Shown: positions 7,032-48,560 of the stretch, piece after piece | Numbering within the stretch: position 1 is the stretch's first letter | How the letters are laid out: the number at the start of each line of letters is the position of its first letter | DNA from: Penicillus capitatus | Taxonomy: Eukaryota; Plantae; Chlorophyta | NCBI GenBank assembly: GCA_965649825.1 | Contig: OZ287706.1 | Location: 186,001-250,000 of the forward strand | DNA: 64,000 nt | Direction of reading: 5' to 3' | Translations under genes and position numbers: made by a program | The notes under the pieces: generated by a model | The model's database searches: none | What the model saw: only the letters and a program-made list of their open reading frames with translations | What the model was told of the DNA's origin: nothing

Positions 7032-10000
7032 TCATGGTATCAGAGTCACTTTAATGCCACCCCGGTTCGTAAGGTGATATTCGATTTCGTTCGAATCGGC
7101 GTGAAATGCCACGACCAGATCGATCTCGCCTTCTCCATCGAAATCGTCATCGAAAATGCGTTTGAATCTGAGAATCGATCCGTCGTCGTCTTGCTCGATC
7201 TCGCCGTCTTCGATTTCGAAGAGATCGCCGTCTTCCACGATGGCATCTGCAGATTTTTCTTCAAGTTTGTAAGTACTCACACTGCCTTCGTCGCCGCCAA
7301 GGCCGATCACTGCCTCGGAGCCGATCATCAAACCTGGACTCTCTGGCCAACCGAGAGCGACCCATCCAGTACCCGTCGTCTGACAGGCAAAGGAAACACC
7401 ATCATCCTCCACAATCCAATGCAAGAGGTATTCGCCGCCCAGTGCTTCGCTCATACAATCGTATCCATCGAGGGTCGATTTGACGCACTCTCCCTCAGGA
7501 GCGTCGCCTGGTACATCGAAGAAATTGACACGGCCAAATATACCACGGCCTTCGTATGTTGTTCCGATGCCGCCGCCGTGGAACTTCAGTTCATCTTCTC
7601 CGTAGAATTTCGCGTTGGAAACGCGACCAGTTTCGAGACCCGAATTTGGGACGTGCGTGTACTTCTTCCTTTCTTGTCCATAGGCGTAGACAAGCAAGTA
7701 GTCCACATCCTTCAGGATGCAGTAGTCTGAGTTGGCATCAACTGTCTCCAGCTTTCTTCTGAACTTCAGATAAGTGTGATCATCGAATTCTGCTCCCAGT
7801 GCATCGGTGATGCCATCATCGCCGCCATAGAAGACATCTGGCAGAGGTTTGGCGCGACTGGGTGTGAAGGAATCTTGAATTCTGAACATGCCGTCTTTGG
7901 TGTAAACAACGTAGATGTCTTGATTAATCATGGCATGCGCCGCTGGCGTTGTCGCGACGTTCTCACACTCCGTTCCTTTGGCGATGATCTCAGGAATGAA
8001 CTCTTTATCTGCAAGACCACAAAGGACGAGACGTTCGGGAACGAAAATGATATGTCATGAAGACTGTACCTTTGTCCGATTTGCCTTCACCCTCAGATTC
8101 CGAACCCCCCTCGCCTTCACCCTCAGATTCAGAATCGCCCTCTCCTTCGGCCTTGGAGTCCTCTTTCTCGTCACCCTCTCCTTCGGCCTTGGAGTCCTCT
8201 TTCTCGTCACCCTCTCCTTCGGCCTTGGAGTCCTCTTTCTCGTCACCCTCTCCTTCGGCATCAGATTCGGCATCTTTTTGTTTCAGAGATCGGCTGGAAA
8301 GACGATCTTCGGTCTTTTCCATGAGAAGAGATGGCATTTCTGCTTTTAATCCACGTTTTCCTTTCGGGCGTTTCACCAAATCATGGGTTCCTTCATCATA
8401 CTCTGCTGTAAAAGGTTTACCATCTTCGCAAACACCCGAAGCACCATCTCCTTCACCCTCAGATTCCGAATCCCCTTCGCCTTCGCCCTCAGATTCAGAA
8501 TCGCCCTCTCCCTCAGCCTTGGAGTCCTCTTTCTCGTCTCCCTCTCCCTCAGCCTTGGAGTCCTCTTTCTCGTCTCCCTCTCCCTCAGCCTTGGAGTCCT
8601 CTTTCTCGTCTCCCTCTCCCTCAGCCTTGGAGTCCTCTTTCTCGTCTCCCTCTCCCTCAGCCTTGGAGTCCTCTTTCTCGTCGCCTTCTCCCTCTCCTTC
8701 GGTTGTGGAATCCTCATCATCTGATTTTTGTTGGAGCATTCGATGATCAATGTTTTTTGCTTCTTGTTGAATCTCAGGCATCCGTCGATGGACCTTTAGA
8801 GAGCGGCGGCGAGATGACTCATCGTCTTCTTCTCCCTCGGAAGCGGTGTCTTTTTCATCCTCGTCTTCTTCAGAAGCCGTGTCTTTGTCTTCGTCGTCTT
8901 CTCCCTCGGAAGCTGTGTCTTTGTCTCCTTCTCCTTCTCCTTCCGTTTCAGCATCAACATCAAGTAGCGTATCATACTCCTCTGCGATTTCTGAACCCAT
9001 TGCATGGTCGTTTCCCAATCCTGTGGCAATGGGACGAAATCCAAATGCAGCCCAGTTACTCGTCTTCGCCTTAATCGCAAATTCAATCTCGTTTGCTTCT
9101 TCATCGATTTTGAAAAACAGTTTGAAATTTCCTTCGGGGACAGATGCGTACATAACGGGATACTCGTCTTCCCAATCATCGGGTTCACCCATCTTCAATT
9201 TACTTCTCTTGTTGCAATTTCTGGACGTGATATATGAACCCTTCAACGGCTTCGTTTCTTTACCAAACCACCCTTCTCGGCAGTAACACTGTTTGTTGGG
9301 AGGCGTAATATTGCCAGTGTCCACACAGACCCCTCCTTCACCGCAGTGCTCATCTTCTTCGCATTCATTCTGACTTTGACAGTATTCTCCATACCAGAAT
9401 CCATCTTTCGGCGAGCTGTCACATTCACACTTGCCCTTCTTATCACATTTACCATGTCCAGAACAGCCATTGCAGTCGGCAGCATCGTCCACGATATCCA
9501 CCAGAGCACAGCTGTGGAATCGGTACCCCGATCCCCATTCCAAAGCCTGACGTCTCAGTCTGAGAACGCATCCCTTGCAAGGGGTCTCGGGCATTTTCAA
9601 TGTGGCAGACTGCTGAGTCGAATCTGAGACGCAGTCCCAGTGATCGCTGTTGTTCCATGTCGACGTCATCTGACTGTCAGCATCGTACAACTCAAACAGC
9701 CAACCACCCTGGTGTGCATAATGCAGCGCCCTGATCACACCGACGATGTAAACCCCGGCCGCTTGACTTAGCGTGAGGGCCTTACCAGTAAACGGTGACA
9801 TTCTCGCCGGCCTTGAATTCTGTCACTGTCTTCGTATTGGGTTCCGGCAATCGCCATTCTTCCGTTTGTTCGGAGCCAGATGCGTCGTGTCCACAGATAC
9901 CGTTTGTGCGGAAGGTATCCAAAAAGTCTAGGCACCCGAGGCATTGTCATGGCTGCAACGGTCGACGGATGAGGCAGCTCTTACCTAAGTTGAGCGTCGC

Positions 10001-10075
10001 AGGCGGATAAAGCAACTGAACGTGTGCATCGACGCTCAGAAAGAGCGCAAAGAGCGTCAGACAGATGCGGAGCAT
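7032..10075 (-). CDS. Secreted protein: signal peptide + N-terminal His-brace (LPMO-like) domain + EGF repeats + DOMON (with large acidic insert) + second DOMON
   Basis: ATG at 10075; introns 9984-9928, 9785-9731 and one near 8070-8010. MLRICLTLFALFLSVDA|HVQLLYPPATLNLDFLDTFRTNGICG..WALHYAHQGGW..RQALEWGSGYRFHSCALVDI; EGF CSGHGKC..CECD and CGEGGVC..CYC; DOMON motifs WAAFGFRP..HAMINQDI..KFHG and WVALGW..GLMIGSE..EYH. Confidence 0.85.
8095..8705 (-). repeat. Coding 36-nt tandem repeats (DEKEDSKAEGEG) in two blocks, each followed by DSESEGEG units
   Basis: About five units of gagtcctctttctcgtctccctctccctcagccttg near 8510-8700 and three units of gagtcctctttctcgtcaccctctccttcggccttg near 8140-8260. 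Synonymous differences are block-specific. Confidence 0.95.
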
Positions 10076-10784: not shown

Positions 10785-12283
10785 TTAGTTTGTGCTGGGT
10801 CCTCGGATTTTTTCGACGACGTGATTTGGTGCCTCGTCCAATTCTCCGGGCAACCAGTTGAAGAGCTGAGGTGGTGCATGATCTGCACAAACATACCGAC
10901 GCCTGTTAGCAGGGGATGCGATCGAAGCGCACAGACCTTTGCCGAAACGTGTGTTGGGGTCACGAAGTTCATCAAAGTATGGATGGGCCAGAGCCTCAAA
11001 GGCAGTGATACGTTGCTTTGGATTGTAAGTGAAGAATTTGGAGAGGAGATCGACAGCATTGGACGGAATATGCCTCTCCGTCATGCGAGAAAGCCATCTG
11101 GCCAATGGCTGGGATCGGATGTTCGGAAATTTAAGCTCGGTGTAGTGACGGTTCATGGCCACCATGTCTTCTCTACTCGGTGTGCCTAGCACTCTCACAA
11201 CTTGAACTAACTGATTCATACTGGTTTCGCCTATATGTCACACAAACAGATTTTTCTCACACATTTGTGGGTGGTGGTGGTTTACTAACTGACCTTGAAA
11301 CATTGGTCGTCCCGTCAATAGTTCAGCCATAACGCATCCTGTTGACCACATGTCAATGGCACAGGTGTATTCGGATGCTCCGAAAATGAGTTCTGGAGCC
11401 CGATAGTATCTGCGCATTGAATATGAGATGCGGTCAAAAGTGTGATCGATGATGTGACCTGGAGCAGATGTATGCAATGTTGGGTTCTCCTTTGACCAGT
11501 ACTTTTGCACTTCCAAAGTCACAAAAGAAGAGTTGTTGCCTTTCCAGGTCCAGAAGAAGATTTTGAGGTTTGATATCTCGATGGCAGATGCCCATAGAAT
11601 GCATGTAAGCCAGTCCTCTGCACATCTGATAGACGTACAATTTCACACATAGCAAGGGCACAGCCTGTTGGTTATTGTTGTAGTGACGGATCAAACGATG
11701 GACCGTATCTGGAACATAATCCAGAACCAAGTGTAAGTAAGACTCATTATCTTCAGCGTTAACGGTGAAGCAATGATGCAGCTTGATGATATTGGGATGA
11801 TTCACTAAACGCATGATTTGCAGCTCACGACTCTTGAATCGCTTGTCCAGTAAAACCTTCTTGATACCCACCTACACGCAGATCGTCCATTGTGTTAGGG
11901 GACAGGGTGCAGGAGAGGGCGATGAAGATACGTGTGCACCCGTGTCGACGCGGACGGCCTTGAAGACAGAGCCAAAAGAACCCGTTCCCGCCAGTTTGCA
12001 CGTGGTATAGCGTATCGTTTCATAGTTACCGCTCTCGTTGAGGATAACGACTTCGAACATCCATCGATTCTCGCTGGCATCCGAATGCAGCACGTGGCCC
12101 TCTGGAACCTACAATGACATTATGTACAGGGAGGACCTCGTGGGTGAAAGGGCACTACTGACCGTTTCCGCTTTTTCCGAAAGCGCCTGAAACTCCCTTA
12201 TCTTTTGATCCTTGACTTTCTGAGCGGCACGGCAGTGAGAGATGAGGGTTGGTGTGGTGGATGGTGGTTTGTGTTACTTTCAT
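10785..12283 (-). CDS. GSK3: Shaggy/GSK3-like protein kinase
   Basis: [70 protein letters not shown] across short introns. First exon uncertain. Confidence 0.95.
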
Positions 12284-23897: not shown

Positions 23898-26800
23898 ATG
23901 ACAGCGACCGACGCTTCCCATTTGGCAGTCGTAATGAATCTATCCCGCGTGCAGTGTTCTCTGGTGCTCAGCAACGAAATCTCGAACGTCGCTACGGCGC
24001 TGCGCCAAACAACGCGATGGGAGAACGAGTATGACGAACCTCTCGAAGACACGCTGCACGGAGAATTCGTCTCGCTGCAGCAGAAAGTATTATATATGCG
24101 ACAGTGGGAAGTGGTGGACCCCTTCGAATACGTGGCGCCCTTTCTCGACGTTGTACGGTCCGAACACGTCGGCGCCGACATCACGAGCACTGCCTTAGCG
24201 GCACTGTGGAAGCTCCTGACCGCCAATGTCGTCCCAGCGTCACACCACAACTCAGCACAGACACTCAAACATGTCGTTTCCGCTCTGGACGGATGCAAGT
24301 TTACCAAGGCATCCAATGTCACGTACGAGACGGTCGTGACCCGTCTCGTTCAAGTCTTTGCCGCGTGCGTTTGTGCAGAAGTGGGTGTTCTGCTGAACGC
24401 AGAGGACGTGACGCTTGTGACGATGAGTATCTGGAAATGGTGTGAGTATTCGCCCACCAATGAATCGGTCATGCGCACCTCACACATCTTCCTTCAAACG
24501 GTGCGGCAGTGTCTGCAGCAATTGATCTCCTGTCTCTTCTCCAGACTCCGCACCTGCCAAGTTTTTCCTGACGAGATACCGGTGCCCACAGAATACGGAG
24601 AACAGACACTCGATTACGTGGGGCTCCGTTCGGACGCCGTTTATCAACCGCCGGGCGTTTCCTTTCATTTGACAGAGGAGTCCATGGTCGCCAATCATCT
24701 CTGCTGTGGTCTGGAGCCCTTCCACGAGATCCTCATCTACTGCACGGAGCCGATGCTCATCGAAAGCGACACCGAACCGCACACCGATCGTATCCTCTTC
24801 GTCCTGCAGATGCTGCACACGGCCATTGTGCACGCCGGGGAGATCCTAGCCGGTTACGGGAGTCTCTTGACCGTGATCCGCGGACACGTGTTTCCTGCCT
24901 TGACCTTCTGTCTCCATCGGATGTCGCAGCGCATCCACGCAGCGGTGTTTCAAGTCGTCTTTGCCATGTACAAGCTCTTCGGAGATGAGCTGCTGCTCCA
25001 GATCGAGTGCTTCTTTCAGACATCCGTCCTGAGACTCTGCGAAGGGCGAGGCTGTCCAACTCAGGAGCACCAGGAGATCGCATTGGAGGCATTGGTAGAC
25101 TTCTGTGGCTATCCAGGATTCCTGAGAGATATCTATCTCAATCTCGACTGCCGCATCGAACGGTCGAATCTTTTCGAAGACATCTGTTCGTTGCTGTCCA
25201 AAACGGCCTTTCCTGTCAAGACCCCACTCTACTCCATCCATATGATCTCTATGGAAGGCCTCCTGGCAATGCTCTTGACGCTGTCCTCCGCCTGCGGAGG
25301 CGACGAAGCTCCTGTGGATCTACCGGAGCCGAAATCGGAGTTGCCGTGTTACGTGGATGTCTGGACAGAACTGTTTAGAGGTGTCTCGCCGCAGTTCGCA
25401 GAGGTGGAAGGTCTGTTGGATGAGATCGAGAACGAAGACATGAAGCACGTCATGATTATCTCTCTAGAGAAACGCCTGAAGCAACGCATTGCCGTCGCCG
25501 TCGATCACTTTAATCGCGATTTCAAGAAAGGATTTCAGTATCTCCGTTCGATTCGTCTCTTTCCCGAAGAGAATAACGCCGACGTGATCGCTAAGTTCCT
25601 CAGAGTGTGCCCTAATCTGAACGGTCACATCATGGGGGACATGTTGGGTGACTGCGATCCCTTCTATCAAGAAATCCTCGAATGCTTCACCGAGACATTC
25701 GATTTCTCAGGCAAAACCATCGACGCCGCCCTCAGAATGTACTTCGATGTGTTCAAAGTCCCCGGAGAAGCGCAGAAGGTCGACCGCGTGTTGAGCAAGT
25801 TCAGTAAGGTCTTCTACGACTATCAAGACGGCACCTTTAAGAACGAGGATTCAGTGCACATCTTGGCCTACTCCATCATCATGTTGAATACCGATCTGCA
25901 CAAGCCCGAGATCAAAAATAAGATGACGCCAGATCAGTTCATCCGCAATAACAGAGGAATGAACGGGGAAGAGGATTTTCCCAAGAGGATGCTGGAGGAT
26001 ATCTACCAGTCCATCAAAGAACAGCCGATGCGTATCAGCGATGGCTCGCATCTCGATTTCTCGCCCGTCAGGTGGATGAATCTGAATCAGGTGTCGAAAA
26101 CATCCCGTGGAAAGAAAGAGAATCCCTTGAGGCTGACGTCTGCCCTCGACAGAGACATGTTCACTCTGATCTGGGGACCTGCCGTTGCAGCGATCTCCGT
26201 GATCCTCGACCAAGCCAACGAGCTGACCACTGTACAGACAACATTGACTGGACTAAAACTGGCGGCTAAGATTGCGTTCTTTCATGGAGTGGACGAAGTG
26301 ATCGACAGTCTTGTCGTCTCGTTATTTAAATCGACGCAAATGCTCAGTCCTCGAACGCCCAAGGCACTTGTGCAGTTTGGCATGAAAGAAGAGGCACAGC
26401 TGGCAACGGAGGCTGCTTTCTTCATTGCGAATAAGTTGATCTTTCTGATCCGTCACGTGGGATAAGACAGGATGGCGGCGATGGTGTGCTTAGGTACACG
26501 AGTAGCTTGGGTAGCTCTGGCTGGCAGAGTGTCATGGACTGCGTCATTCGGTTGAGCCAACTCGAAATCCTGCCTCCGCATTTCTGGGAAGACGGTCTGC
26601 ATGTCGCACCGACAGCCTCGCATTTCTGAAAGCTGTTTTGTTTGTGTGTGCATCACAGAGAATGAATCAGATGGATTCTCCGAACCGATGTTCGAGATGT
26701 CGGCCGAGAACAGTAGCTCAACTGGTGGATCCAGCGTCAGTGCAACGCTGTGGCCATTCAGGAAAACAGATTCGCCGCTTTCGGAAGAGGAACAGGCCGC

Positions 26801-28204
26801 ACAGCAACGAGCACTGAGCTGCATCCGACGATGCGAGATCCGTGTCGTGTTCCGCGATACGAAGTTCCTGAAGATTGAGTCTCTCATCGAACTCATCAAA
26901 GCCATCTGCTTTGCCTCGCACGCCGACGAAAAGACAGCCCGCATCTGTCTGGATCTCGTTTTCTACATCACACTGCGTAACCGAGATCGCATCCAGCACG
27001 TCTGGCCAGAGATCGAGGCGCATCTGGAGAGGATACTGAACACGGAACCCAAGTTGCCGTCATCGATCATTGAAGCCGCCGTCTTCGGCATTCTCCGCGT
27101 CTGTCAACGATCCCTTGCGAAGAATGGACTGTCCGGTATCATGCTTCGCATTTTGCAGATGGTGCCGAATGTCGGAGAAGAGATCATTGAGAAAATCGCC
27201 GAACGGCTTTCCGAAGAGATTCACATCCTCATCAAACTGGCAGCACCGGTGATCGAGGAAGGCTGGGCGTGGGAAGCGATCTGTCATCTGCTGTACCTCT
27301 CTGCCACTTCCAGAAAGAACATTCTCTCTGGCGTGGACACTCTAGCCATCATCGCCAAGAACGGAGAGCACATCTCTTCTGAGAACTTCTTGACGGTTAT
27401 GGAGACGCTGAGATATTTTCAACAGCAGTCCAGTGCCGACACCGTCTGCATGATCGTGGATCTGATTCACGATATGGTCTCCTGTTTAACGACCTGGCCA
27501 CTGCCACCCACCGGCGGCGATCAACTCGAGAGCGAAGTCCAAACAGCTGCCACACAGCGAGGCATTCTGTGGTACGGTGCCTTTGTCCAACTGAAGAACT
27601 CGGCTACGGAAATGGACGCTCAAGTGTTTTTTACGGACTGTTTTGTAGTTCTGCAGCAGACGGACTGTCTTTAGGTGCGCAACCATGCAGTGCTAACGCT
27701 GCAGAGATGTGTCATGCTTGGCGAAACGTTGAAGTTGCCGATGGAGACGTGGAAGAAGACGTTGAAGAAAGACATGATGGACTTTGTACAGTTCCTCACC
27801 AAGAAACAGAATAGCCGTGACTTCCCCGAATGTGACAAGACACTGCGTCAGGCGCTGAGAATCTTGACGAAGACTTTCCTGCAGTTTCTGGATGCCATTA
27901 AAGGCGACGCAGATTTCCCACAGACATGGGTGAAAATCCTCTACCTTCTTCAGGTGCGTCGCTCACTGAAGCGTCATCGAAATCTGATGTGACGTGTGTT
28001 CAGCAATCGTACTCTGGTCGAGAGGACGAGCTCTCCGATGCGGTGCCTGAGGAGACGAAGAATCTGATACTGGTGATGCACAAAGAAGGCATCTTGATTG
28101 AAGGCTGGGCGGATGAGAACGGCATGTCCATGTGGGACATAACATGGCGCAAAGCACGTGACATTTCGTTTGCGTTGAAGCCAGAGATGTTGTTGAATCT
28201 GTAA
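23898..28204 (+). CDS. GNOM/GBF1-type ARF guanine-nucleotide exchange factor (Sec7 domain)
   Basis: YLNLDCRIERSNLFEDIC; HFNRDFKKG; FKVPGEAQKVDRVL (Glu finger); LAYSIIMLNTDLH; WGPAVAAISV; ends WDITW..LLNL TAA. Confidence 0.95.
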
Positions 28205-32763: not shown

Positions 32764-35700
32764 TCAGGACGGCGACCACCAGGACGATGACGGCGACCAT
32801 TCCGTCAGTCTCTTCGGTTCCTGGCTCTTACGATCGTAGACAGAGCGCAGCTTCTTCGCTGCGTTGCTGTTGAGACGGAAACGACATTTGCCCTGTTTCC
32901 GCATCCGCTCAAAATCCTGAACGCGGCCACAGCAAACACTCAGAGGCGCTGTCGAGAGCGCGGCGGCGCACTTTGAGAAACTGAGGAGCGCTGTTGCGGA
33001 TCTCTTCGGCTGAGGGCAGGGCCATGCGTTCTGTCCTGGCCTCTAGGTGACGTCGGACCTTCTTTGCATTGAGACGAGCTCTCCATCTTCGCTCCAGTCT
33101 CGGCACGAGGACCGCTGTGCTGAAGTTGAGCGTGGCATCGACCGGAAGATCGTTGAAGAATTTTTCGACGAGTTTATCGAGCTGATTTTTGATCTCTCCC
33201 TGTGGCATGACCGTCTCGCAGCAACGACGGACGAGTTCGTAAGCCGTCCGATGAAACGGCACGCGTCCGTCGATGACTGGAATATCCAGATCGTAAACGA
33301 AACGCAGGACGTCGTTGCTGTCGGCATAGGGTCCGAGTCCAAGAGGCGGCGGAAGTCGGACCAGAATATGCTCCAGCTGTTTGGGCGAAATATTCGTCGA
33401 GCCATCGTCGTATTCGCTCCACAGATCGACAAACTCTTCCAGCATCGACGGATGGAGCTTCCATTGGTCTTGATCCTGTTGCTTCTCGAAGTTTTCGATG
33501 ATGACGGCCGTAAAGAGGTTGAGCATGATGATGGAGATCGACAGAACGAAAGTGAGGAAGTAAGGAATCGCCACAAACACCGACGCCTTCATGCATCCCT
33601 CCATCACACCTTTCCACTCGTCATTGGTCGCCACGCGAAAGAGAGTGAGCATCGCCATCGGGAAGGTCTCAAAATTAGCGTGCTCGTTAATGTGGGCCCC
33701 TCGCTCGGCAGTTCCAAAGGAGAGAACGCCCGTGTAGGCGTAGACGAAGAAGAGGAGGAGGATCAGAGCGCCGACGTTCCAGAAGGCGGGGAGAGAGACG
33801 ACCAGTGTGGCAAAGAGGGATCGAATGCCTTTGAGTCCTCGGATGAGCTTAAACATACGAGAGATGCGCAGCAGCCTGAGGAGCTTCTGAATGGCAAAGA
33901 CCTTGTCAATGCTGGCGAATCCGACGGAGACGTAAGAGAAGAGCAGATCGACGGAAGAAACGACGACCAGCGTGAAATCGAATTTGTTCCATCCGGACTT
34001 CCAGTAGATGCTCCAGCCGAAGGAGAAGATCTTGAGAGCCGCTTCGGCGCCAAAGATACCGGAGAAGACGATGTTGCAGATCTCTTTGGCACGTGTGAAA
34101 CGCGGAGACTCGTTGTAAACGGTCGCCGCCAGGAGGATCACGTTGAGGACGATGTTTACCGTGATAAATACATCGAATTCTCTCGAAAGGGCGACGCGGT
34201 AGCATCCACGGCGGAAAAGCGACTTTGGAAGAGGCGCCTTGGCGATGGGCTTCAATCGGAAGACCATCTTGATCAGCTCGGACCATTCCTAAGACGGATG
34301 CGGGAGCTAAGTGCTACGGTTAGAGGTTTTCTACTTGCTGGTTCGATGTGAGAAACGCCGAGCCGGTTTGGCTGAGGAGTCGGATGCGGGAGAATTGATA
34401 GAAGACGACGCCGACGTAGAGGTTCAGAAGACAGAAGGCGCAGACCATGATGAAGGCCATAAAGTAAAAGAAGGCTCCCGGGTTTGCCATGTGTCTCGGC
34501 TGTCTGTCCTTCTCGGTAACCGACATAGCGTCCACCAAGATATTGTTGTAGCCATCTTGGGTAACAGTAATGAACAGCGTCAGCAAGGCGTTGCCAATAT
34601 CGTCGAAATGAAAGGTCGCATTGGACCACTCGCGTTGGATCTCGCCTTCTTCAGAATGCCAGAAGATCCCCACGCATTCCCACTTGAATTCAATGGCATC
34701 GTCGTTGCACCTTTAGGTAAAGGATGGATGGTGGAGAGGGCGGTGCCGGGGTTACCTGTAGAAGCGCCCGGAGAATAGCTGGACGCCAAGGATGGCGAAG
34801 ATGATGCAGAAGAGGAGGCAGACGACGGATACGTTGGCCATGGCTGCGAGGGATAATGTCACCGAACGAAACACAAGCAGCATTCCGGCACTCCGCGTCA
34901 GGACACGGAGCGGCTTGATGGCTCGCAAAACGCGCAGTGTCTTGACCAACTGGACATCCATCGACTCCAATACCAATACGAGAATCGACGACAAGACAAT
35001 AGACAGATCCACCTGCATAACACGCCCCGCCGCCGCCTCTCAAGTGGATCGCTTCGTACTGTTCAGCTTACTTTGTTCGTGAGCGTCTGGATGTAGACGG
35101 AGAAGGAGAGGGCGATGGATTTCATGAGGAACTCGAGTCCGAAGACGACGGTAAAAAACGCGTCTAGATAGAAGAGCATAGTCTCCTCGGGGGATCCCGG
35201 TTGGATGGAAGGCCGCTCGAATGTCATGGCGATGCAGCTGAGGAGGATCATGAAGAACATGACGTATTCGAAGAGATCCGAAGAGGTCATGCGCATCAGC
35301 AGGAGGCGAAATGGATTCTCTGGGCCAATAAACCACCAAGCATAACCCGTCAGCTTCGCCGTCTCTTGCTCTTCTATGTTAGATGGCTCGTCGATGGCGG
35401 CGGAAACGTCGATATTATGGTGGGTGTCGACGGTTACGGAATCAGAGACGACAGTTTGTTGAGATGGAAGCAGCTCGGAGACTGGAGGGTTTCCATCGCT
35501 TGTTCGCTCGACAGCGACCCTTGCTTCACGCGTGGCCTCCACGCGTCTGTTCGCGTCGACATCGGCTGCGTCAGCCAACACACTCCCCCGTGGGTGGGTC
35601 ATGTGACTTTGGACGTCGCTTAAAGTCGAGTGCTGTCTGTGTCTGATGCGCCACTGCAATGCTCGTGTGGCATTGCGGAGAAAATCGCAGCACGACTTGA

Positions 35701-38700
35701 AAAATCGATTGCTGTGTGGGTGGAGTGTCTCATTGCGCGGCGTCGGTTTGCTCGAAGAGAACGCCGACTCGGAAAGGACGATTCGCCGCTCACCGTCTAG
35801 CACTTCAACGTACGGCGCAAAATCGACACTTCTCTTCGAACGTTGTGTCGACGGCGGCGTCGATGCCGTGAAGCTCTGTCCGTCGTCGGCCTTTGTCGAA
35901 AAAGTGTGATGCATTCTTAGCACCGAAGGCAATTCTGTCAGCGCATAGCCAGACCCGCCGCCAGTGGACGACGCTCCACGTCTCGGCGTCGGCAGGGACG
36001 TGACGTCGAGATCCGTCACCTCGCTGGTTTCGGACGATGCGCCGTCGCTGATCGTCGCGTCGTCGATCTCCTCAACCGTTTCCAGCGTCGGCTGCGAAGA
36101 CGGCGTCGACACAGCCATCACGCCTTCCTTCTTCTGCTCCATCTGAATCGCGTGTTCCCAGTTCTCTGCGAAAACACAACGTGCGTTGGACAAAGAAATT
36201 CCGTTAGTGATCTGTGCCCTTGTCAGCGGGGTAGGCATCGCTCGATGCATCGGCCTCGTACTTCGATTCGAATGCTTCCAGCGTCACCGCCAAGAAGAGC
36301 GTCAAGAATATATACTTCCCAAGCACGACCCAGGATACAAAGAAGAGGACACTCCAGTCGTTCGTTTCGCGGACAACGGCATACATCGTAATCTCCCAGT
36401 CCTCCAACGTCAATACCTACAGCGCAGATACCCACTTCTGATGCGTTTGCCCCGACGGCGGCAGCTTCGAACGTTGAACATGACGATGATGGCGTCAAGG
36501 AAGGAATTGAAGTTGGGAAAGACATTGTCCGCGAAGATCCCTCCATAGACGTGAAGACCCACAATGGCATAGACGACCATGAAGATGAACATCAACAGGA
36601 CGATGGCGATGAAGGACGAGGCGGACGAAACTAAGACCTCTCCAATCTTCCTCAGCGAAGATAGGTATCGGAACACCTTAAACAGACGAAACACGCGAAA
36701 CGCCTTGAGCACGTGGAGGCTCTCGATGGATCTGAGTGAAGGCACCATCGGCGTTTGGTGTTGTCGACAGATGGGCTCACTCGTTGTTGCCACCGATGAG
36801 CTGGAAGGCGAGTTCGATGAAGGCAAAGACGACGATGACGGCGTCGAAGACGTTGAAGCGATCGGCACAGTAACGCCGCCAGCCCAGTCCGATGAGTTTG
36901 GCGATGAGCTCCACAGTGAAGAGTCCAGTGAGGATGACGTTGGCGATGGAAAGGAAGGATTTTAGACTGCCAGACATGCCGTCATGCTCCAATGTCAACA
37001 GCAACGTGTTAAGGATGATGCATCCGAGGAAGAAGTCGGAAAAGAGCGGAGTCTCGACCCCACGTCGTGCAGCGGACTGCACACGCTCTCGTGCGAAGGC
37101 GCATCGATTCCATGCCCTTTGCGAGGTCGATAAGACGATGCGTGCCTGATAAGAGAGATGATCATTTTGAGACGGCGCCCTTTCGAGAAGGCATACCGTC
37201 GATTGTCGCGCTCGGGAGAAGCTGTCCAAGAGTCGCTCCAGCGAGGCGCCTTCCATCTGGCCAGTCATATTGGACGACGATCTGCGCGTGGTGCGTAGGT
37301 ATATCGTGGACGACGTCGTCGATGCGTTTTACTTGATCGACGGCAACCGCCGCCACGTTCCGCTGCACACAGCGACGCATTTCTGAATGATATTGCGTCG
37401 CATCCGAGGAGAGGTCTTGACTTTGCTCTGAAACAGCGACTGCGCTTTGCCGAACTTCGTTTTCAGAACGGCGAGGAAGAGATTGACCTACGATGATGAC
37501 ACCGCACAGATGTGGCGCCTCCTGTTCTAAGGCGACCCACGACAAAGAAGGCGCCAAAGAGGATCAAGAAGACGAAGTAGAGACAGGTGATGATGGAGGT
37601 GTTGTCCATCGCTCTGTACATAACGTAGGACCATCCTCCAAGGGTGGTGCATTGGAAGACGGTGAGCATGCTCGATCCGACATTGTCGAATCCGGCGACG
37701 TCTTGATTCGTTCCGATATCGACGCTGCGACAGGAGAAGCCCTGTGGACAGGAACGCATTCCGCCGCAGCCCATTTCGTCGGGACTGTTGCCAAGTGCTC
37801 TCTCCATTTCGCCCGTCACATCATCGAAGCATGCTTTGTGATAGACATCGGAGTAGACTTGCAGACCGGCGATGGCGAAAAGAAAGAGGAAGAAAAAGAG
37901 CATACCGACCACAGATACCAGCAGAGGGACAGCCTACGCAATGCATGCTCCGTTGCGGTCGGCGTCGATGGCGGCGGCTCTGACACCTCGAGGAAGCACA
38001 CGACGACGGAGCGCAGTGACTGAAATCGTGTGATCGTGCGCAAAGGACGCAGCGCTCGGAGGGCTCGCAGAGCGCGAAAAGAACTCGTGCTTCCACTCCC
38101 TTCGCCGTTTTGCATGAGGCTGGTATAGCCAACGAGCACCATCGCCCCGTCGAAGATATTCCACGGTTCGCGAACGTAGCCGAGAGGACCACGAGCCGCC
38201 ATACGCACGACCATCTCCACGGAGAAGATACCATTGAAGGCGAGATCTGTCAACGGCGAGCATGAGTGGAGGAAACGACAGAAGTCGGGCACACCGATAG
38301 CGGAGAGGATGCTGTTCCACGTGGATGTCTCCGACTGCATCGGGTCGTACATCGCCAGCGTCACGCAGTTGGCCAGAATCAAGACGATGATCAGTAGTTG
38401 GATGTCTTTGTGGTCGTCCACCGCTATGAACCATTTTCTTACCGCCGAGTGACGCGCCGTTTCATCAGCCGAGTCCGTTTCACTCTTCTCGTCGACAGCG
38501 TTGGTCAGACCTGAACGAACGAACAGGAAAGCGCGACGTGTGGCGGCAGACAGGTGGAGTATGGCAGACCTAGATTCTTGATGATGCGTGTGGTGCGAAC
38601 GACGCTGTTGCGGACAATGGACGTGACGCTGAGGCGTCCGTCGCTGCGCTGTGGTGGTCCTTCTTCGTCTACTTCGTCCGCCTCCAGCTGTCTGCGCTAT

Positions 38701-45051: not shown

Positions 45052-48000
45052 ATGGCCAGTTCCGCATTTTATCGCGAAGCGGTCGCGAATCAACAGAAAC
45101 TCTTCGAAGAGCTTGTTGGAAAGATCCTCGGTCCGGAGGTCGCACCGACCGTCGCGCGATGTGACGTTTGCCATGGGTCCGTTTCTCTAGGCGACCACCG
45201 GAGAGAAGAGACGGGCAGTGGGGCGCTGTCAACATCGCTCGGCGTTTCATGGCTGCCTCGACACGCATTCCACGGCAGTCGAGGCGGAGCTGCGTCGCAT
45301 CGTCGAGTTCATGCGGATCGAATCGCGGGAGCGCGACACAGCAAGACTGCTAAAACTCAAGGAGCGTTTTCTCAGTCTATCCCTTCCGTCTGACGTCACA
45401 GACGTGCACTACGTTATGCTTCGCTTCCTGACCTGCCTCACTGGCAATCTCTCCCGCGCCAGTCAAAGGACAGAAGAGGCAATGGAGATCGAATCATCCG
45501 ACGGGGCAGCGAACAAAGACGACGTCAGTCTTTCTAACTCTCTGAGTGATTCCGCAGAAGCGAGTGCATCGGAGCTGTCGTGCTGGTCTGAAGAGGACGT
45601 CGGCGAGGAGAGCAGCCATACGGCCATGAGCAGCGAGGACATGCCACAGGAAGCAGCTCTGCTGAACTGGGAGGCGTACTTCGTCCCCTTCTGCGATGCC
45701 GAGACGTCTGTCGTCCGAACAGAGCAGCCGTCCGATGGATCGCTGCTGGAATGCTTGACGAAGATTCAGTTGCCAGAGGTGCCATTGAGTGCTTGTCTGT
45801 TGTTTCTGCGTTCGGAGTGGGACCTTGTCCTCAGTTGCCTGAGAGTCCTCCAGGGACGAGACTCTGTGGCCTTTCAGTGGGATCGATGCACTCGTGCCTT
45901 CGCAATCGATGTCCATCTTCAGACGCTACACTTTTCCGCCGCCACGATGCGACATGCGCTAGAATGGTTTGGACGCTATGGATGCGACACTCGGTGTCTC
46001 CTGGAATGGACGGCTTCCATCGTGGACGTGAGCAGTCGACAGGAGCTGAGCGGAAGCTACGGCCGCCGTCCTCTCTCTTCCCAACCCGTCGTCTGTCCAA
46101 CCCTCTCCGCAACGGCACATGCGATTCAGGCCGAGCTCAATCGATTGCTGCGTCCTTTGATTCAGACGGAGCATCTCGTCGAATGCGATCCCAGTCGTCG
46201 CGTAACGCTCGTTCGTTTGAAATGCCTGACATCGGCAACGGCACGACAGATTCGCGTACTGCACAGTGTGGTGCGGGAACTGCAGCGCGTATTAGAGAGT
46301 GATATGTCTTCGAATGCCATGACGTCTGCCGTTTTGGACTGTCTCTATGACATGGCGACGAAGAACGAGGCGAACAGCAGTCCTCTCTTTCAGGCAGGAG
46401 ATGAAATGATCTGGAAGATCTTTACCGAAGCACTGTCGCCTCTTCTCTCGCACTTGACGGCTTGGCTGTACATGGGCGATGTCTCGAGCCTTGCAGACGA
46501 TTTCTTTATTTCGTCGATGCCGGCGCGTCAGACAGAGGAGGCAGATTTCTGGTTGGATGCTTATGTCTTGAAGGACGATGGGTCATGTCCCAAATTCCTT
46601 TCTCCCATTGTCTCTGCCATCCACGACGGTGGCAAGGCGCTGCAATTCATGCGGAATCAAGAGCAGGGTTGTGCATTCGATAAATTCGGAACGCAGGAGG
46701 TCGTTGGGACGGGAAAACTGCAAGCGCTCGTTTCCGATCAGTGGACGAATGATCATCTCTGCCAGCAATTCATGAAGTACCTCGCGTCGAACAGCGAAGA
46801 CGCTGTCAGCGAAGAGACGTCGGAATCGACTAGCCTCGCTCAGAAAATGGCCATTGCTGGAAAACATAGAGGCGAAGACGCTGTGCATATTCTGCAGGGA
46901 GCGGTTCCTTGGGAGTATGTGGCCGACGAAGACGCGACTGCCGAATTCAGGACGCCATCGACGAGTCCGAATGTCTATTCCCAATCTTCCACGAGTAATG
47001 ACGTGGCGACGGCTGCTCCGCACGAGAACGTCATCGTTTCGGCGGCGGATGCATCTGACTGGCCAGACTCGTATGTCGACATCGGCAAAGCGATGGAACG
47101 TGTGCGAATTGAATTCGAGTCTGCGTTGCTCACCCAGCCGTCCCACTGCAAGTAATGATATCGCCCGTCGTCTTTGCATGGTGTGGTGGCACACTGTATT
47201 GCACGTGCAGGAATGCCGCTCTGTGTCAGGTCCTTCCTGGAGGCGCCGATCGTCTGCCCTACGCCGAACTCCGAGAAACCATTTTCAAGAGCAGGGGCAC
47301 AGAGATTCCTGCCTTCCCGAACAAGGACGCCGATCTGTCCACCTCGACACGCAACGGCATCCGTTGTGCCCCGGCCGAGGTCGTACTCAGACAAAGCCTC
47401 ATCACGACCTTGCTCAACAGAGTCCGTCCCATTGCTGCTGCCCTTTGGTTTGAAGCTGCTTTCTAGAGTGTGGAGGTCGTTCGCTCCTTCATCGACTTTC
47501 TGCTGAAGGATCAGGGTTTGATGTCGGAGATCCAGATTCTCAAAAACGTCTTCCTTCTCGGTTCGCCTGCCATGGCAGAATGGGTGCGGCGTTTTACCGA
47601 ACAGCTGATTCAGAGCGACGGTCTCGAAGATCTGATCGAGTTCCACGTCCTCACGGATATGCAGGAGTGCTTTCGCAGCTGTCACATCGGCGAGGAGCTG
47701 CCCATCTGCGGATACAACGAATTCGACGAGCTCTTCTTCGACATGCGTCTCTCGCAGTGGGATAAGCGCTTTTCAGATCAGCAGCATCTGTGGAAGGAGA
47801 GGTCACCTCAGGAGATCCACGAATGTGGCCTGAACTATCCCCTCAAGTGGCCCCTCTGTCTCGTCGTCAATGAGCCTCGCCTGAAGAGATACAACAAGGT
47901 GTTTCTCTTTCTCCTGAAGATGCAGTGGGTCAGTTATGCCGTCAAAAGCAACGGCTGGCGAATGAAGCAGCTCCGAGACCACGTATCCCCTGAGCTGCTT

Positions 48001-48560
48001 GTACCGTATGCCCAGCTGCAGAACTGGCGACAGCTGTACCGACTTTCCCACGAGATGACGCACTTTATGAAGCACCTGCAGCAGCACGTCCTGGAAAACA
48101 TCCACACAACGTTTGATCGATTCTGCCAAGTGCGAGCTGTCTTTGATGTGACGTTTGGTGCATACGGTATGTGCGTGCTCAGGGGATGGCGGATGCGCAG
48201 TCCGTTAGCGAACTGCTCAATCAACACGATGCCGCCTTGGAAGATATCGTGCGTTTCAGTTTTCAGACGAAGAAGAAACAATGGGCGACGGTCCATACCC
48301 GTCTTCTCACTCTCTTCCACGCCATTCTCAATTTCTGCGCTTTATGGAAAGCCATTGCTGTCACAGATCGTAGAGAGACGGGCAAGATCGATGTCCTGTT
48401 GGAAGGCATGAATCGAGTGGTCGGGCAATATAACGACACTCGGGCAAGCGTGATGATGATTTTGCAGATCTACAGTTTCTCCCTGGGCGGCAACCGAGAA
48501 CTCAATCATCTCATCGCGCTGCTCAATTTCAATGACATCTACCAACATTACACGCCTTAA
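45052..48560 (+). CDS. Gamma-tubulin complex component (Spc97/98 family, GCP5-like)
   Basis: LLSHLTAWLYMG..DDFFI; FWLDAY..CPKFL..IHDGGKALQ; LKNVFLLGS; LNYPLKWPLCLVV..RYNKVFLFLLK. Paralogue assignment is less certain than the family. Confidence 0.85.

What the first reader, a model, noticed from the sequence alone, without database searches (positions are those of the whole stretch)
7032..10075. Secreted His-brace (LPMO-like) domain fused to two putative heme-binding DOMON domains: a possible self-reducing copper oxygenase in an alga
Seen only after splicing the first two exons, which the ORF track misses. Signal peptide ..VDA ends right before His (codon 10024-10022). A second His cluster WALHYAHQGG and a closing strand YRFHSC..VDI follow, then EGF repeats and two DOMONs. 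Each DOMON has a Met (HAMINQD; GLMIGSE) and a late His (KFHG; EYH). Established: LPMOs (AA9/10/11/15) and LPMO-like X325/Bim1 proteins bind Cu with His1 plus a second His. Heme DOMONs (CDH cytochrome, cyt b561-linked DOMONs) use Met/His ligation, and the CDH cytochrome reduces LPMOs. From memory, similar H1-EGF-DOMON proteins exist uncharacterised in invertebrates. Inference: a one-chain electron donor plus Cu site acting on wall polysaccharide, or a Cu-handling protein.
Basis: partly seen in the sequence, partly recalled or inferred. Interest (0 to 1): 0.8.

Follow-up and report, generated by a model that had tools for sequence, protein, structure and literature searches.

The report
Copper His-brace domain fused to heme DOMONs
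A green alga's secreted protein joins a copper-binding domain of the LPMO type to two probable heme-carrying DOMON domains, and it belongs to an uncharacterised family shared by algae and invertebrates that may carry electrons from hemes to an extracellular copper site.

Summary
A four-exon gene on the minus strand (10075-7032, three GT..AG introns) encodes a 956-aa secreted protein. An intronless orthologue (P0163) confirms all three splice junctions.

- **N-terminal domain.** The mature N-terminus is His. That His follows a signal peptide in 64 of 64 complete relatives. The 142-aa domain models confidently (pLDDT 89.8), and its 21 best PDB fold matches are all LPMOs or LPMO-like proteins. 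A family profile hits the AA15 LPMO 5MSZ, aligning the second His to His91 and Phe132 to Tyr184.
- **Family placement.** The domain falls below the Pfam cut-offs for both LPMO_10 and BIM1-like. I read it as a separate clade between them.
- **DOMONs.** Two EGF-like modules and two DOMONs follow. Each DOMON keeps a conserved Met/His pair.
- **Electron source.** Algal relatives (Bryopsis, Apatococcus) add a cytochrome b561. This protein has none and is soluble, so "self-reducing" overstates it.

Copper binding, heme binding and catalysis are all untested. An LPMO-type oxidase and a Bim1-like copper handler both remain open. I found only a passing mention of the architecture in the literature (Voshol 2019).

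The parts
9985..10075 (-). Exon 1: start codon, signal peptide (10075-10025), and the first residues of the mature protein
   Evidence: A GTAAG donor follows at 9984. An in-frame TAA lies 9 nt upstream of the ATG.
10022..10024 (-). Codon of His18, which is His1 of the mature protein (the proposed N-terminal ligand of the His brace)
   Evidence: His follows a signal peptide in 64/64 complete relatives and is invariant in alignment A1.
9786..9927 (-). Exon 2, the middle of the His-brace domain
   Evidence: The junction peptides are identical in the intronless orthologue P0163.
8070..9730 (-). Exon 3: rest of the His-brace domain, the EGF modules, the N-terminal part of DOMON1, and most of the acidic loop
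7032..8008 (-). Exon 4: end of the loop, the C-terminal part of DOMON1, DOMON2, and the stop codon (7034-7032)
9487..10024 (-). His-brace (LPMO-superfamily) domain, aa 18-159, spanning introns 1 and 2
   Evidence: AF2 pLDDT 89.8 and pTM 0.85. The top 21 Foldseek PDB hits are all LPMOs or LPMO-like proteins. The A1 profile hits TdAA15A 5MSZ at E 1.4e-6. LPMO_10 scores 17.7 bits, below its cut-off of 23.
9712..9714 (-). Codon of His84 (mature His67, in AHQGG), the proposed second His of the brace
   Evidence: Conserved in >=90% of A1. It aligns to His91 of TdAA15A.
9517..9519 (-). Codon of Phe149 (mature Phe132, in YRFHSC), the proposed axial aromatic residue
   Evidence: Conserved in >=90% of A1. 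It aligns to Tyr184 of TdAA15A.
9208..9486 (-). Two EGF-like modules acting as a spacer
   Evidence: Pfam EGF_2, E 2.6e-5, 24.9 bits. The same modules occur in relatives.
9025..9162 (-). DOMON1, N-terminal strands (aa 268-313)
   Evidence: Joining this piece to 7515-7940 gives a full DOMON match, profile 3-124 of 124, E 7e-24.
7950..8997 (-). Polyacidic low-complexity loop inserted in DOMON1 (aa 323-651, net charge -85; spans intron 3). It contains 36-nt tandem repeats.
   Evidence: All 33 relatives compared carry an insert of 20-627 aa at the same site.
7515..7940 (-). DOMON1, C-terminal part (aa 655-796). It carries Met658 (7931-7929) and His775 (7580-7578).
   Evidence: The Met and His are invariant in 36/36 sequences and in A2. 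The fold matches CDH cytochrome domains.
7035..7493 (-). DOMON2 (aa 804-956). It carries Met859 (7328-7326) and His943 (7076-7074).
   Evidence: Pfam DOMON E 8.3e-6 when scanned alone. The model is a beta-sandwich with pLDDT mostly 80-95. The Met is invariant, and the His is kept in every row that reaches that position.

Best explanation
**What it is.** This is a soluble, secreted, modular redox protein of a bryopsidalean green alga. The signal peptide is removed to expose His1. With His67 and the axial Phe132, His1 forms a mononuclear copper His brace on a small LPMO-type beta-sandwich. That domain belongs to a separate, uncharacterised clade lying between AA15/AA10 and X325/Bim1.

**The rest of the chain.** Two EGF modules hold the copper domain away from two DOMON domains. 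Each DOMON most likely binds one b-type heme through a conserved Met/His pair.

**How it most likely works.** The hemes probably take single electrons from an outside donor. Candidates are a membrane cytochrome b561-DOMON paralogue fed by cytosolic ascorbate, or apoplastic reductants. The hemes then pass the electrons to the copper, as the cellobiose dehydrogenase cytochrome does for LPMOs. I think the reduced copper most likely activates O2 or H2O2 for oxidative chemistry on a wall or matrix polymer.

**Shown versus inferred.** The gene model, domain identities, residue conservation, predicted folds and the b561 fusions in relatives are shown here. Cleavage of the signal peptide is inferred from sequence and from the 64 relatives. 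Copper binding, heme binding, electron transfer and the final reaction are also inferred.
For: - **His1.** It lies directly after a signal peptide in 64/64 complete relatives.
- **Conserved core.** H1 is invariant; H67, F132 and E125 are >=90% conserved.
- **AA15 match.** The family profile hits AA15 5MSZ at E 1.4e-6, aligning H67 to His91 and F132 to Tyr184. Those roles are described in PMC5823890.
- **Fold.** A confident model has its 21 best PDB matches all among AA10/AA16/AA11/AA9 entries.
- **DOMON ligands.** The DOMON1 Met and His are invariant in 36/36 sequences. DOMON2 keeps its Met and His.
- **DOMON fold.** The DOMON model matches heme-binding cytochrome domains of CDH (1PL3, 4QI3, 1D7B), pyranose dehydrogenase (6JT6) and ethylbenzene dehydrogenase (2IVF), each at probability 1.00.
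- **Contrast with DBH.** The heme-free DBH DOMON lacks axial ligands. The family's Met aligns to a Leu in DBH.
- **Linkage.** 34 of 37 long relatives carry this special DOMON1 after the copper domain.
- **b561 relatives.** Algal relatives P0006 and P0155 and locus L002 end in cytochrome b561.
- **CYBDOM precedent.** A CYBDOM protein carries ascorbate electrons over three hemes to external Fe(III) and Cu(II) through a DOMON Met/His heme (PMC10784544).
- **Topology (my inference).** In anchored relatives the copper domain sits at the end furthest from the membrane anchor. That suits chemistry out in the wall or matrix.
Against: - No copper, heme or activity data exist.
- I had no model coordinates, so the brace geometry and the heme-to-copper distance could not be measured.
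- The window domain scores below the LPMO_10 cut-off. It lacks most of the part matching LPMO_10 profile positions 1-60. From my own knowledge, that part forms much of the substrate surface in AA10.
- 35 of 54 relatives also hit the non-catalytic BIM1-like profile, nearly end to end.
- The family spans animals and algae, which share no obvious common polysaccharide.
- The segment holding the DOMON1 His is poorly modelled (pLDDT below 50).
- This chain has no electron source of its own.
Confidence: 0.4

Rival explanations
1. Copper capture and reduction. The His-brace domain acts like Bim1/X325. It binds extracellular Cu(II), the DOMON hemes reduce it to Cu(I), and the metal is handed to an importer. 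No polysaccharide is oxidised.
For: - 35 of 54 N-domains hit Pfam BIM1-like_dom (best E 1.7e-7). P0043 and P0070 reach 26.1 and 26.6 bits against a cut-off of 27, covering about 136 of 140 profile positions.
- The domain is small and lacks the LPMO_10 N-terminal region.
- X325 proteins show no polysaccharide activity, and Bim1 works with Ctr1 in copper uptake.
- A CYBDOM protein reduces cupric substrates.
- A universal need such as copper fits a family shared by sponges, arthropods, nematodes and green algae.
Against: - The window's own domain gives no BIM1-like hit at E<=0.1.
- The family profile finds AA15 among solved structures but no X325 entry.
- No entry described as X325 or Bim1 is among the 50 Foldseek matches listed.
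- The window protein has no GPI signal or membrane anchor.
- In anchored relatives the copper domain is at the end furthest from the membrane, which is a poor position for hand-off to a transporter (inference).
- LPMO-type sites bind Cu(I) more tightly than Cu(II), so reduction alone would not release the metal.
Confidence: 0.3
2. A redox protein with another acceptor. The copper site is an electron-transfer or oxidase centre, for example making H2O2 or reducing iron or another small molecule. The DOMON hemes serve as the wire.
For: - Met/His DOMONs and b561 fusions point to electron transport.
- CYBDOM proteins reduce ferric chelates.
- LPMOs without substrate reduce O2.
- An electron-transfer role for His-brace proteins is listed as an open possibility in PMC10952591.
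Against: No specific evidence supports it. The copper domain would be unnecessary for plain ferric reduction, which CYBDOM proteins perform without it.
Confidence: 0.15
3. A non-redox matrix or adhesion protein. The His-brace domain would be a degenerate binding module, and the DOMONs would bind sugars rather than heme.
For: - DOMON-type folds can bind sugars.
- EGF modules and long low-complexity loops are typical of matrix proteins.
- A few relatives have lost the second His, as in PTKGG and PNRGG.
Against: - His1 is invariant directly after the signal peptide in 64/64 relatives.
- The Met/His pairs are invariant.
- Fusion to cytochrome b561 in algal relatives makes little sense without redox chemistry.
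Confidence: 0.08
4. An artefact: a wrong gene model or a pseudogene whose N-terminal His is an accident of the chosen splice sites.
For: The first two exons are short and are missed by ORF lists. The exact window ORFs are not on record as called genes.
Against: - All introns are GT..AG and the model is in frame.
- The intronless orthologue P0163 has the same junction peptides, N-terminus and C-terminus.
- Locus L001 shows the same exon 1 pattern...AVLG|HIHLTYP.
Confidence: 0.02

Closest known systems
AA15 / AA10 lytic polysaccharide monooxygenases (Pfam LPMO_10; e.g. TdAA15A, PDB 5MSZ)
   Same: An N-terminal His follows the signal peptide. The second His and the axial aromatic lie at aligned positions, on a beta-sandwich LPMO fold.
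   Different: The domain scores below the Pfam cut-off and is about 142 aa rather than 170-230. It lacks most of the part matching LPMO_10 positions 1-60. It has Tyr where AA15 has Ala89, two residues before the second His. It is always followed by EGF modules and DOMONs rather than CBMs.
X325 / Bim1 LPMO-like copper proteins (Pfam BIM1-like_dom PF20238)
   Same: Small His-brace domains of about 140 aa. Many relatives match this profile nearly end to end at near-threshold scores.
   Different: Known members are fungal and GPI-anchored, with an Asp as fourth copper ligand and no fused cytochrome. The window domain itself does not hit the profile. No GPI signal is present, and an equivalent Asp could not be checked.
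Cellobiose dehydrogenase cytochrome domain plus LPMO
   Same: A heme b held by Met/His in a DOMON-type fold gives electrons to a His-brace copper site.
   Different: In fungi the two are separate proteins, and CDH has its own flavin dehydrogenase as electron source. Here cytochrome and copper domains share one chain and there is no dehydrogenase.
CYBDOM proteins (cytochrome b561 + DOMON; e.g. Arabidopsis HYP1, CRR) and AIR12
   Same: An extracellular DOMON with a Met/His heme. Ascorbate-driven transmembrane electron flow reaches external Fe(III) and Cu(II). Algal relatives P0006, P0155 and L002 have the same b561 end.
   Different: The window protein has no b561 and is soluble. No described CYBDOM carries a His-brace copper domain.
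Dopamine beta-hydroxylase / MOXD family (DOMON + copper monooxygenase)
   Same: A DOMON fused to a copper oxygenase in a secreted protein. The DBH DOMON is the best fold and sequence match for the DOMON part.
   Different: The DBH copper domains are of the unrelated two-copper PHM type. Its DOMON has no heme ligands.

Membership tests
LPMO (AA10/AA15, Pfam LPMO_10 PF03067) | His as first residue of the mature protein | tested here: met
   The signal peptide ends ..SVDA|H, and the same arrangement occurs in 64/64 relatives. Actual cleavage was not tested, because no signal-peptide predictor was available.
LPMO (AA10/AA15, Pfam LPMO_10 PF03067) | Second brace His and axial Phe/Tyr at the family's positions | tested here: met
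   In the profile alignment to 5MSZ, H67 aligns to His91 and F132 to Tyr184. Both are >=90% conserved.
LPMO (AA10/AA15, Pfam LPMO_10 PF03067) | Score at or above the curated Pfam cut-off | tested here: not met
   17.7 bits against a cut-off of 23, covering profile positions 61-180 of 183 only. 33 of 54 relatives match at E<=0.1, best 6.4e-7.
LPMO (AA10/AA15, Pfam LPMO_10 PF03067) | LPMO beta-sandwich fold | tested here: met
   Model pLDDT is 89.8. The top 21 PDB matches are all LPMOs or LPMO-like proteins, with E from 1.5e-5 and TM 0.42-0.58.
LPMO (AA10/AA15, Pfam LPMO_10 PF03067) | T-shaped Cu brace geometry, copper binding, and oxidative cleavage of a polysaccharide | not testable with these tools
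X325 / Bim1 (Pfam BIM1-like_dom PF20238) | Score at or above the curated Pfam cut-off | tested here: not met
   The window domain gives no hit at E<=0.1. 35 of 54 relatives hit. P0043 scores 26.1 and P0070 26.6 bits against a cut-off of 27.
X325 / Bim1 (Pfam BIM1-like_dom PF20238) | C-terminal GPI anchor | tested here: not met
   There is no hydrophobic C-terminal segment. The only hydrophobic stretch is the signal peptide.
X325 / Bim1 (Pfam BIM1-like_dom PF20238) | Asp carboxylate as fourth copper ligand | not testable with these tools
   The feature is described in PMC10952591. D14 is invariant, and D17 and E125 are >=90% conserved, but their positions relative to the copper could not be measured.
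DOMON (Pfam PF03351) | Score at or above the curated cut-off and a DOMON beta-sandwich fold | tested here: met
   93.1 bits against 32.7 for the whole protein. DOMON1 without its loop matches profile 3-124 of 124. The fold matches the DBH DOMON and CDH cytochromes.
Heme-b DOMON cytochromes (CDH cytochrome, AIR12, CYBDOM DOMON) | Conserved Met and His axial ligands | tested here: met
   M658 and H775 are invariant in 36/36 sequences. M859 is invariant and H943 is kept. In DOMON2 the two residues are 84 apart, the same spacing as HYP1 M90 and H174. The heme-free DBH has Leu at the Met position.
Heme-b DOMON cytochromes (CDH cytochrome, AIR12, CYBDOM DOMON) | Bound heme b with a cytochrome spectrum | not testable with these tools
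   This needs purified protein.
CYBDOM (cytochrome b561 + DOMON) | Transmembrane cytochrome b561 domain in the same chain | tested here: not met
   tblastn with P0006 finds nothing in the window for its residues beyond 1072. There is no membrane segment. Orthologues P0163 and P0039 end at the same place. Relatives P0006 (30.2 bits against 23) and L002 do have b561.

The most novel reading that the evidence does not exclude
The family is a new class of copper oxidase whose power supply is built in. An array of heme DOMONs, fed in some species by cytosolic ascorbate through a fused cytochrome b561, would wire electrons out from the cell. They would reach a distal His-brace copper site that remodels the organism's own wall, cuticle or matrix. 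This would be an ancient system kept from green algae to sponges, nematodes and arthropods. The window protein would be the soluble, wall-resident version.
Probability: 0.25. Interest if true: 0.85.

Novelty: new variant of a known kind. Interest (0 to 1): 0.66.

Why it matters
Fungal LPMOs can take their electrons from a separate protein, the cytochrome domain of cellobiose dehydrogenase. How the many LPMO-like proteins of animals and algae are reduced is largely unknown.

A natural one-chain fusion of a His-brace copper domain with Met/His DOMONs would give a directly testable model of heme-to-copper electron delivery outside the cell. In some species that fusion extends to cytochrome b561.

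It would also give a first function to a widespread family of "uncharacterised" cell-surface proteins of invertebrates. It would help decide where the border lies between catalytic LPMOs and Bim1-type copper handlers. If the domain is catalytic, it could found a new auxiliary-activity family from organisms with mannan and xylan walls.

Tried and rejected
**Searches that gave little or nothing**
- A single-sequence search of the N-domain against PDB sequences gave nothing useful. Only the family profile found AA15.
- The word-index protein search returned only exon-sized fragments. The exhaustive search was needed.
- A PDB search with an animal N-domain, meant to reach X325, found nothing.
- The DOMON1 profile against PDB sequences found only DBH.
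- I tried to fetch plant CYBDOM proteins, to align their published Met/His with this family. The search returned only two algal fragments.
- Exact look-ups of the window's two long ORFs were not on record.
- Literature searches for CYBDOM with LPMO, and for b561, DOMON and LPMO together, found nothing.
- A lead from memory that Drosophila nahoda might belong here could not be checked.

I repeated it with contiguous segments.

**Ideas considered and rejected**
- The acidic region is not an intron. It is an open frame, it is present in the intronless orthologue, and it sits at the same site in all relatives compared.
- There are no missing downstream exons with a third DOMON or b561. Nothing turns up in the window, and orthologues end at the same residue.
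Full report
**1. Gene model**

The finding lies on the minus strand. The exons are 10075-9985, 9927-9786, 9730-8070 and 8008-7032. All three introns (57, 55 and 61 nt) begin with GT and end with AG. The 2871 nt read in frame to a stop at 7034-7032, giving 956 aa. An in-frame TAA sits 9 nt upstream of the ATG.

The model does not rest on my choice of splice sites. P0163 is an 894-aa protein read as one uninterrupted ORF on a 3224-nt JGI contig. It has the same peptide across each junction (PPATLNL|DFLDTFRT; VTVFW|ALHYAHQGGW...EFVPELIAEGTECENVATT...). It starts with a signal peptide followed by HVQLLYPP, and it ends at the same position. A second genomic relative, L001, shows the same exon 1 logic...CCTAVLG|HIHLTYPRATL.

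**2. Host**

The window is part of a 954-kb ENA contig. Its neighbouring genes are ordinary eukaryotic ones: a GNOM-type Sec7 exchange factor, a gamma-tubulin complex protein and a voltage-gated channel. The Sec7 protein is closest to Bryopsis sp. KO-2023 (53%) and Ostreobium quekettii (48%). "An alga" is therefore right, and more precisely a siphonous green alga of the Bryopsidales or close to them.

**3. N-terminal domain**

*Family and conservation.* The 17-residue signal peptide (MLRICLTLFALFLSVDA) is the only hydrophobic segment of the protein. It ends directly before His (codon 10024-10022).
- An exhaustive HMMER search with the mature domain found 205 relatives at E<=1e-3.
- In all 64 relatives with a complete N-terminus, the aligned residue is His and it is directly preceded by a signal peptide.
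- In an alignment of 54 domains, H1, P7, D14, C25, G26, G69 and C135 are invariant. H67 (AHQGG), F132 (RFHSC), E125 and two more Cys are at least 90% conserved.

*Links to known structures.*
- A profile of this alignment finds the AA15 LPMO of Thermobia (5MSZ) at E 1.4e-6 and an AA9 entry weakly.
- The printed alignment puts H67 on His91 and F132 on Tyr184. These are the second brace ligand and the axial residue of that enzyme (PMC5823890).
- The AlphaFold model is confident (pLDDT 89.8, pTM 0.85).
- Its 21 best PDB matches are all AA10, AA16, AA11 or AA9 entries. TM-scores of 0.42-0.58 are moderate, because the domain is smaller than those proteins.

*Limits of the LPMO assignment.*
- The window domain scores 17.7 bits on LPMO_10 against a cut-off of 23. 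The match covers only profile positions 61-180 of 183. Most of the N-terminal part of that profile is therefore missing. From my own knowledge, this part forms much of the substrate surface in AA10.
- Across the family, 33 of 54 domains hit LPMO_10 (best 6.4e-7). However, 35 of 54 hit BIM1-like_dom, the X325/Bim1 family (best 1.7e-7).
- Two animal members reach 26.1 and 26.6 bits against a cut-off of 27, covering almost the whole 140-position profile.
- X325 proteins bind copper with a brace plus an Asp, show no polysaccharide activity, and Bim1 serves copper uptake.

I therefore file the domain as a separate clade of the His-brace/LPMO superfamily, not as a member of AA15, AA10 or X325. I could not measure brace geometry, because model coordinates are not exposed to scripts.

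**4. DOMONs**

*DOMON1 is split.* Pfam finds DOMON at 93.1 bits against a cut-off of 32.7. Strands at aa 268-313 and aa 655-796 together give a full-length DOMON match (profile 3-124 of 124, E 7e-24) once the 329-aa loop between them is removed.
- The loop is E/D/G/K-rich with net charge -85. It holds perfect 36-nt tandem repeats.
- All 33 relatives compared, animal and algal, carry an insert of 20-627 aa at the same site. The inserts are mostly E/P/S/T/G-rich, and a few hold extra DOMONs. The split is thus a conserved trait, not an annotation error.

*Met/His pairs.*
- The Met just after the loop (HAM) and the His of K[FY]HG are invariant in 36 of 36 sequences.
- DOMON2 keeps its Met (GLMIG) in all 16 aligned rows. 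Its late His (EYH) is kept in every row that extends that far.
- In DOMON2 the two residues are 84 apart, the same spacing as the M90/H174 pair proposed for the heme of the Arabidopsis CYBDOM protein HYP1.

*Fold.*
- The two-DOMON model is of medium quality (pLDDT 74.6). The segment around the DOMON1 His is below 50.
- Its confident fold matches are the DBH DOMON, the heme-binding cytochrome domains of cellobiose dehydrogenase (1PL3, 4QI3, 4QI7, 1D7B), pyranose dehydrogenase (6JT6), and the heme subunit of ethylbenzene dehydrogenase (2IVF).
- The DBH DOMON binds no heme and has no axial ligands (PMC4846438). In the profile alignment the family's Met faces a Leu of DBH.

Heme binding is thus well motivated but remains an inference.

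**5. The family**

Named members come from these organisms:
- Algae and relatives: Bryopsis, Apatococcus, Pyramimonas, Rhodelphis.
- Animals: the sponge Sycon, nematodes, a copepod, a horseshoe crab, an annelid, a butterfly and a hemichordate.

All are labelled uncharacterised or named only by a domain.

Of 37 members of at least 600 aa with a complete copper domain, 34 carry this particular DOMON1 downstream. The pairing is therefore close to obligatory.

The C-terminal ends differ:
- Bryopsis P0006 adds a third DOMON and a cytochrome b561 (30.2 bits against a cut-off of 23).
- Apatococcus P0155 has a b561-type end as well (20 bits, below the cut-off; a source names it a cytochrome b561 domain protein).
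- Animal proteins have further DOMONs and a single membrane segment.
- The window protein and its orthologues P0163 and P0039 stop after DOMON2 and are soluble.
- One sample holds both kinds: L001 without b561 and L002 with it.

**6. How it most likely works**

The constant features are a copper site of LPMO type, Met/His DOMONs, and in some species a b561 that is known to bring ascorbate electrons across the membrane to a DOMON heme. The simplest reading is an extracellular relay from heme to copper.

This chain has no electron-generating domain, so "self-reducing" is too strong. It would need a donor, plausibly a membrane b561-DOMON paralogue or apoplastic reductants.

For the last step I favour O2/H2O2 chemistry on a wall or matrix polymer (about 0.4). 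My reasons are these:
- The closest solved relatives are catalytic LPMOs.
- Cytochromes of this fold are natural LPMO reductants.
- In anchored relatives the copper domain sits at the end furthest from the membrane, behind spacers and DOMON arrays. That position suits work in the matrix better than hand-off to a transporter. This last point is my inference.

The main rival is Bim1-like copper capture and reduction (about 0.3). It is favoured by the BIM1-like profile matches, the small size of the domain, and the wide taxonomic spread. Other redox roles (0.15), a non-redox matrix role (0.08) and an artefact (0.02) follow.

**7. Novelty**

In the searchable literature I found one passing remark. 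Voshol et al. [quoted passage not shown] Other searches found nothing on this architecture.

The parts are known kinds, but the combination is an uncharacterised variant. The window adds a soluble algal form, and the family comparison adds a conserved split DOMON. I rate interest at about 0.66.

Noticed in passing
window 7950-8997 (-); repeats at 8138-8259 and 8504-8694: The acidic loop inside DOMON1 contains 36-nt tandem repeats (3.4 copies at 100% and 5.3 copies at 98% identity) encoding EGEGDEKEDSKA units. This points to recent expansion. The loop is 329 aa with net charge -85. Its role is unknown; it could be a spacer or a cation binder.
   Followed up: partly
L001 7600-12200 and L002 2400-8200 (sample SRR23272282): One sample carries two paralogues of this family. 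For L001 no cytochrome b561 part was found. L002 matches the Bryopsis protein through residue 1258, including b561. Soluble and membrane-wired forms may work as a pair. I could not find exon 1 of L002.
   Followed up: partly
relatives P0036, P0085, P0097 (not in the window): In some animal members the insert in DOMON1 is 515-627 aa long and itself contains further complete DOMON domains, so one DOMON is nested inside another.
   Followed up: no
relatives P0032, P0037, P0043, P0050, P0076 (not in the window): Arthropod members share a strongly conserved cytoplasmic tail ending ...PDFYFMPSQRKYSGEVVRVYVDY.. after the membrane segment. This looks like a sorting or signalling motif.
   Followed up: no
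window 23898-26465 (+), continuing into 26601-27674: GNOM/GBF-type Sec7 Arf exchange factor. The 855-aa ORF is identical to a gene call on ENA contig ctg340479 (954 kb, ERZ25074695). Its nearest named relatives are Bryopsis (53%) and Ostreobium (48%), which places the window in a bryopsidalean green alga.
   Followed up: yes
window 32909-36250 (-) and 45218-48411 (+): A voltage-gated cation channel gene (Ion_trans and PKD_channel hits) and a gamma-tubulin complex component (GCP N- and C-terminal domains). Both appear split over several ORFs by introns.
   Followed up: no
window 10785-11219 (-): The ORF directly upstream of the gene reads like the C-terminal lobe of a protein kinase (my reading of the sequence only). 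It has no Pfam hit at E<=1e-5.
   Followed up: no
relatives P0065, P0104, P0115 (not in the window): A few members have Thr or Asn in place of the second brace His (PTKGG, VTEGG, PNRGG) while keeping His1. They may be copper-free variants.
   Followed up: no
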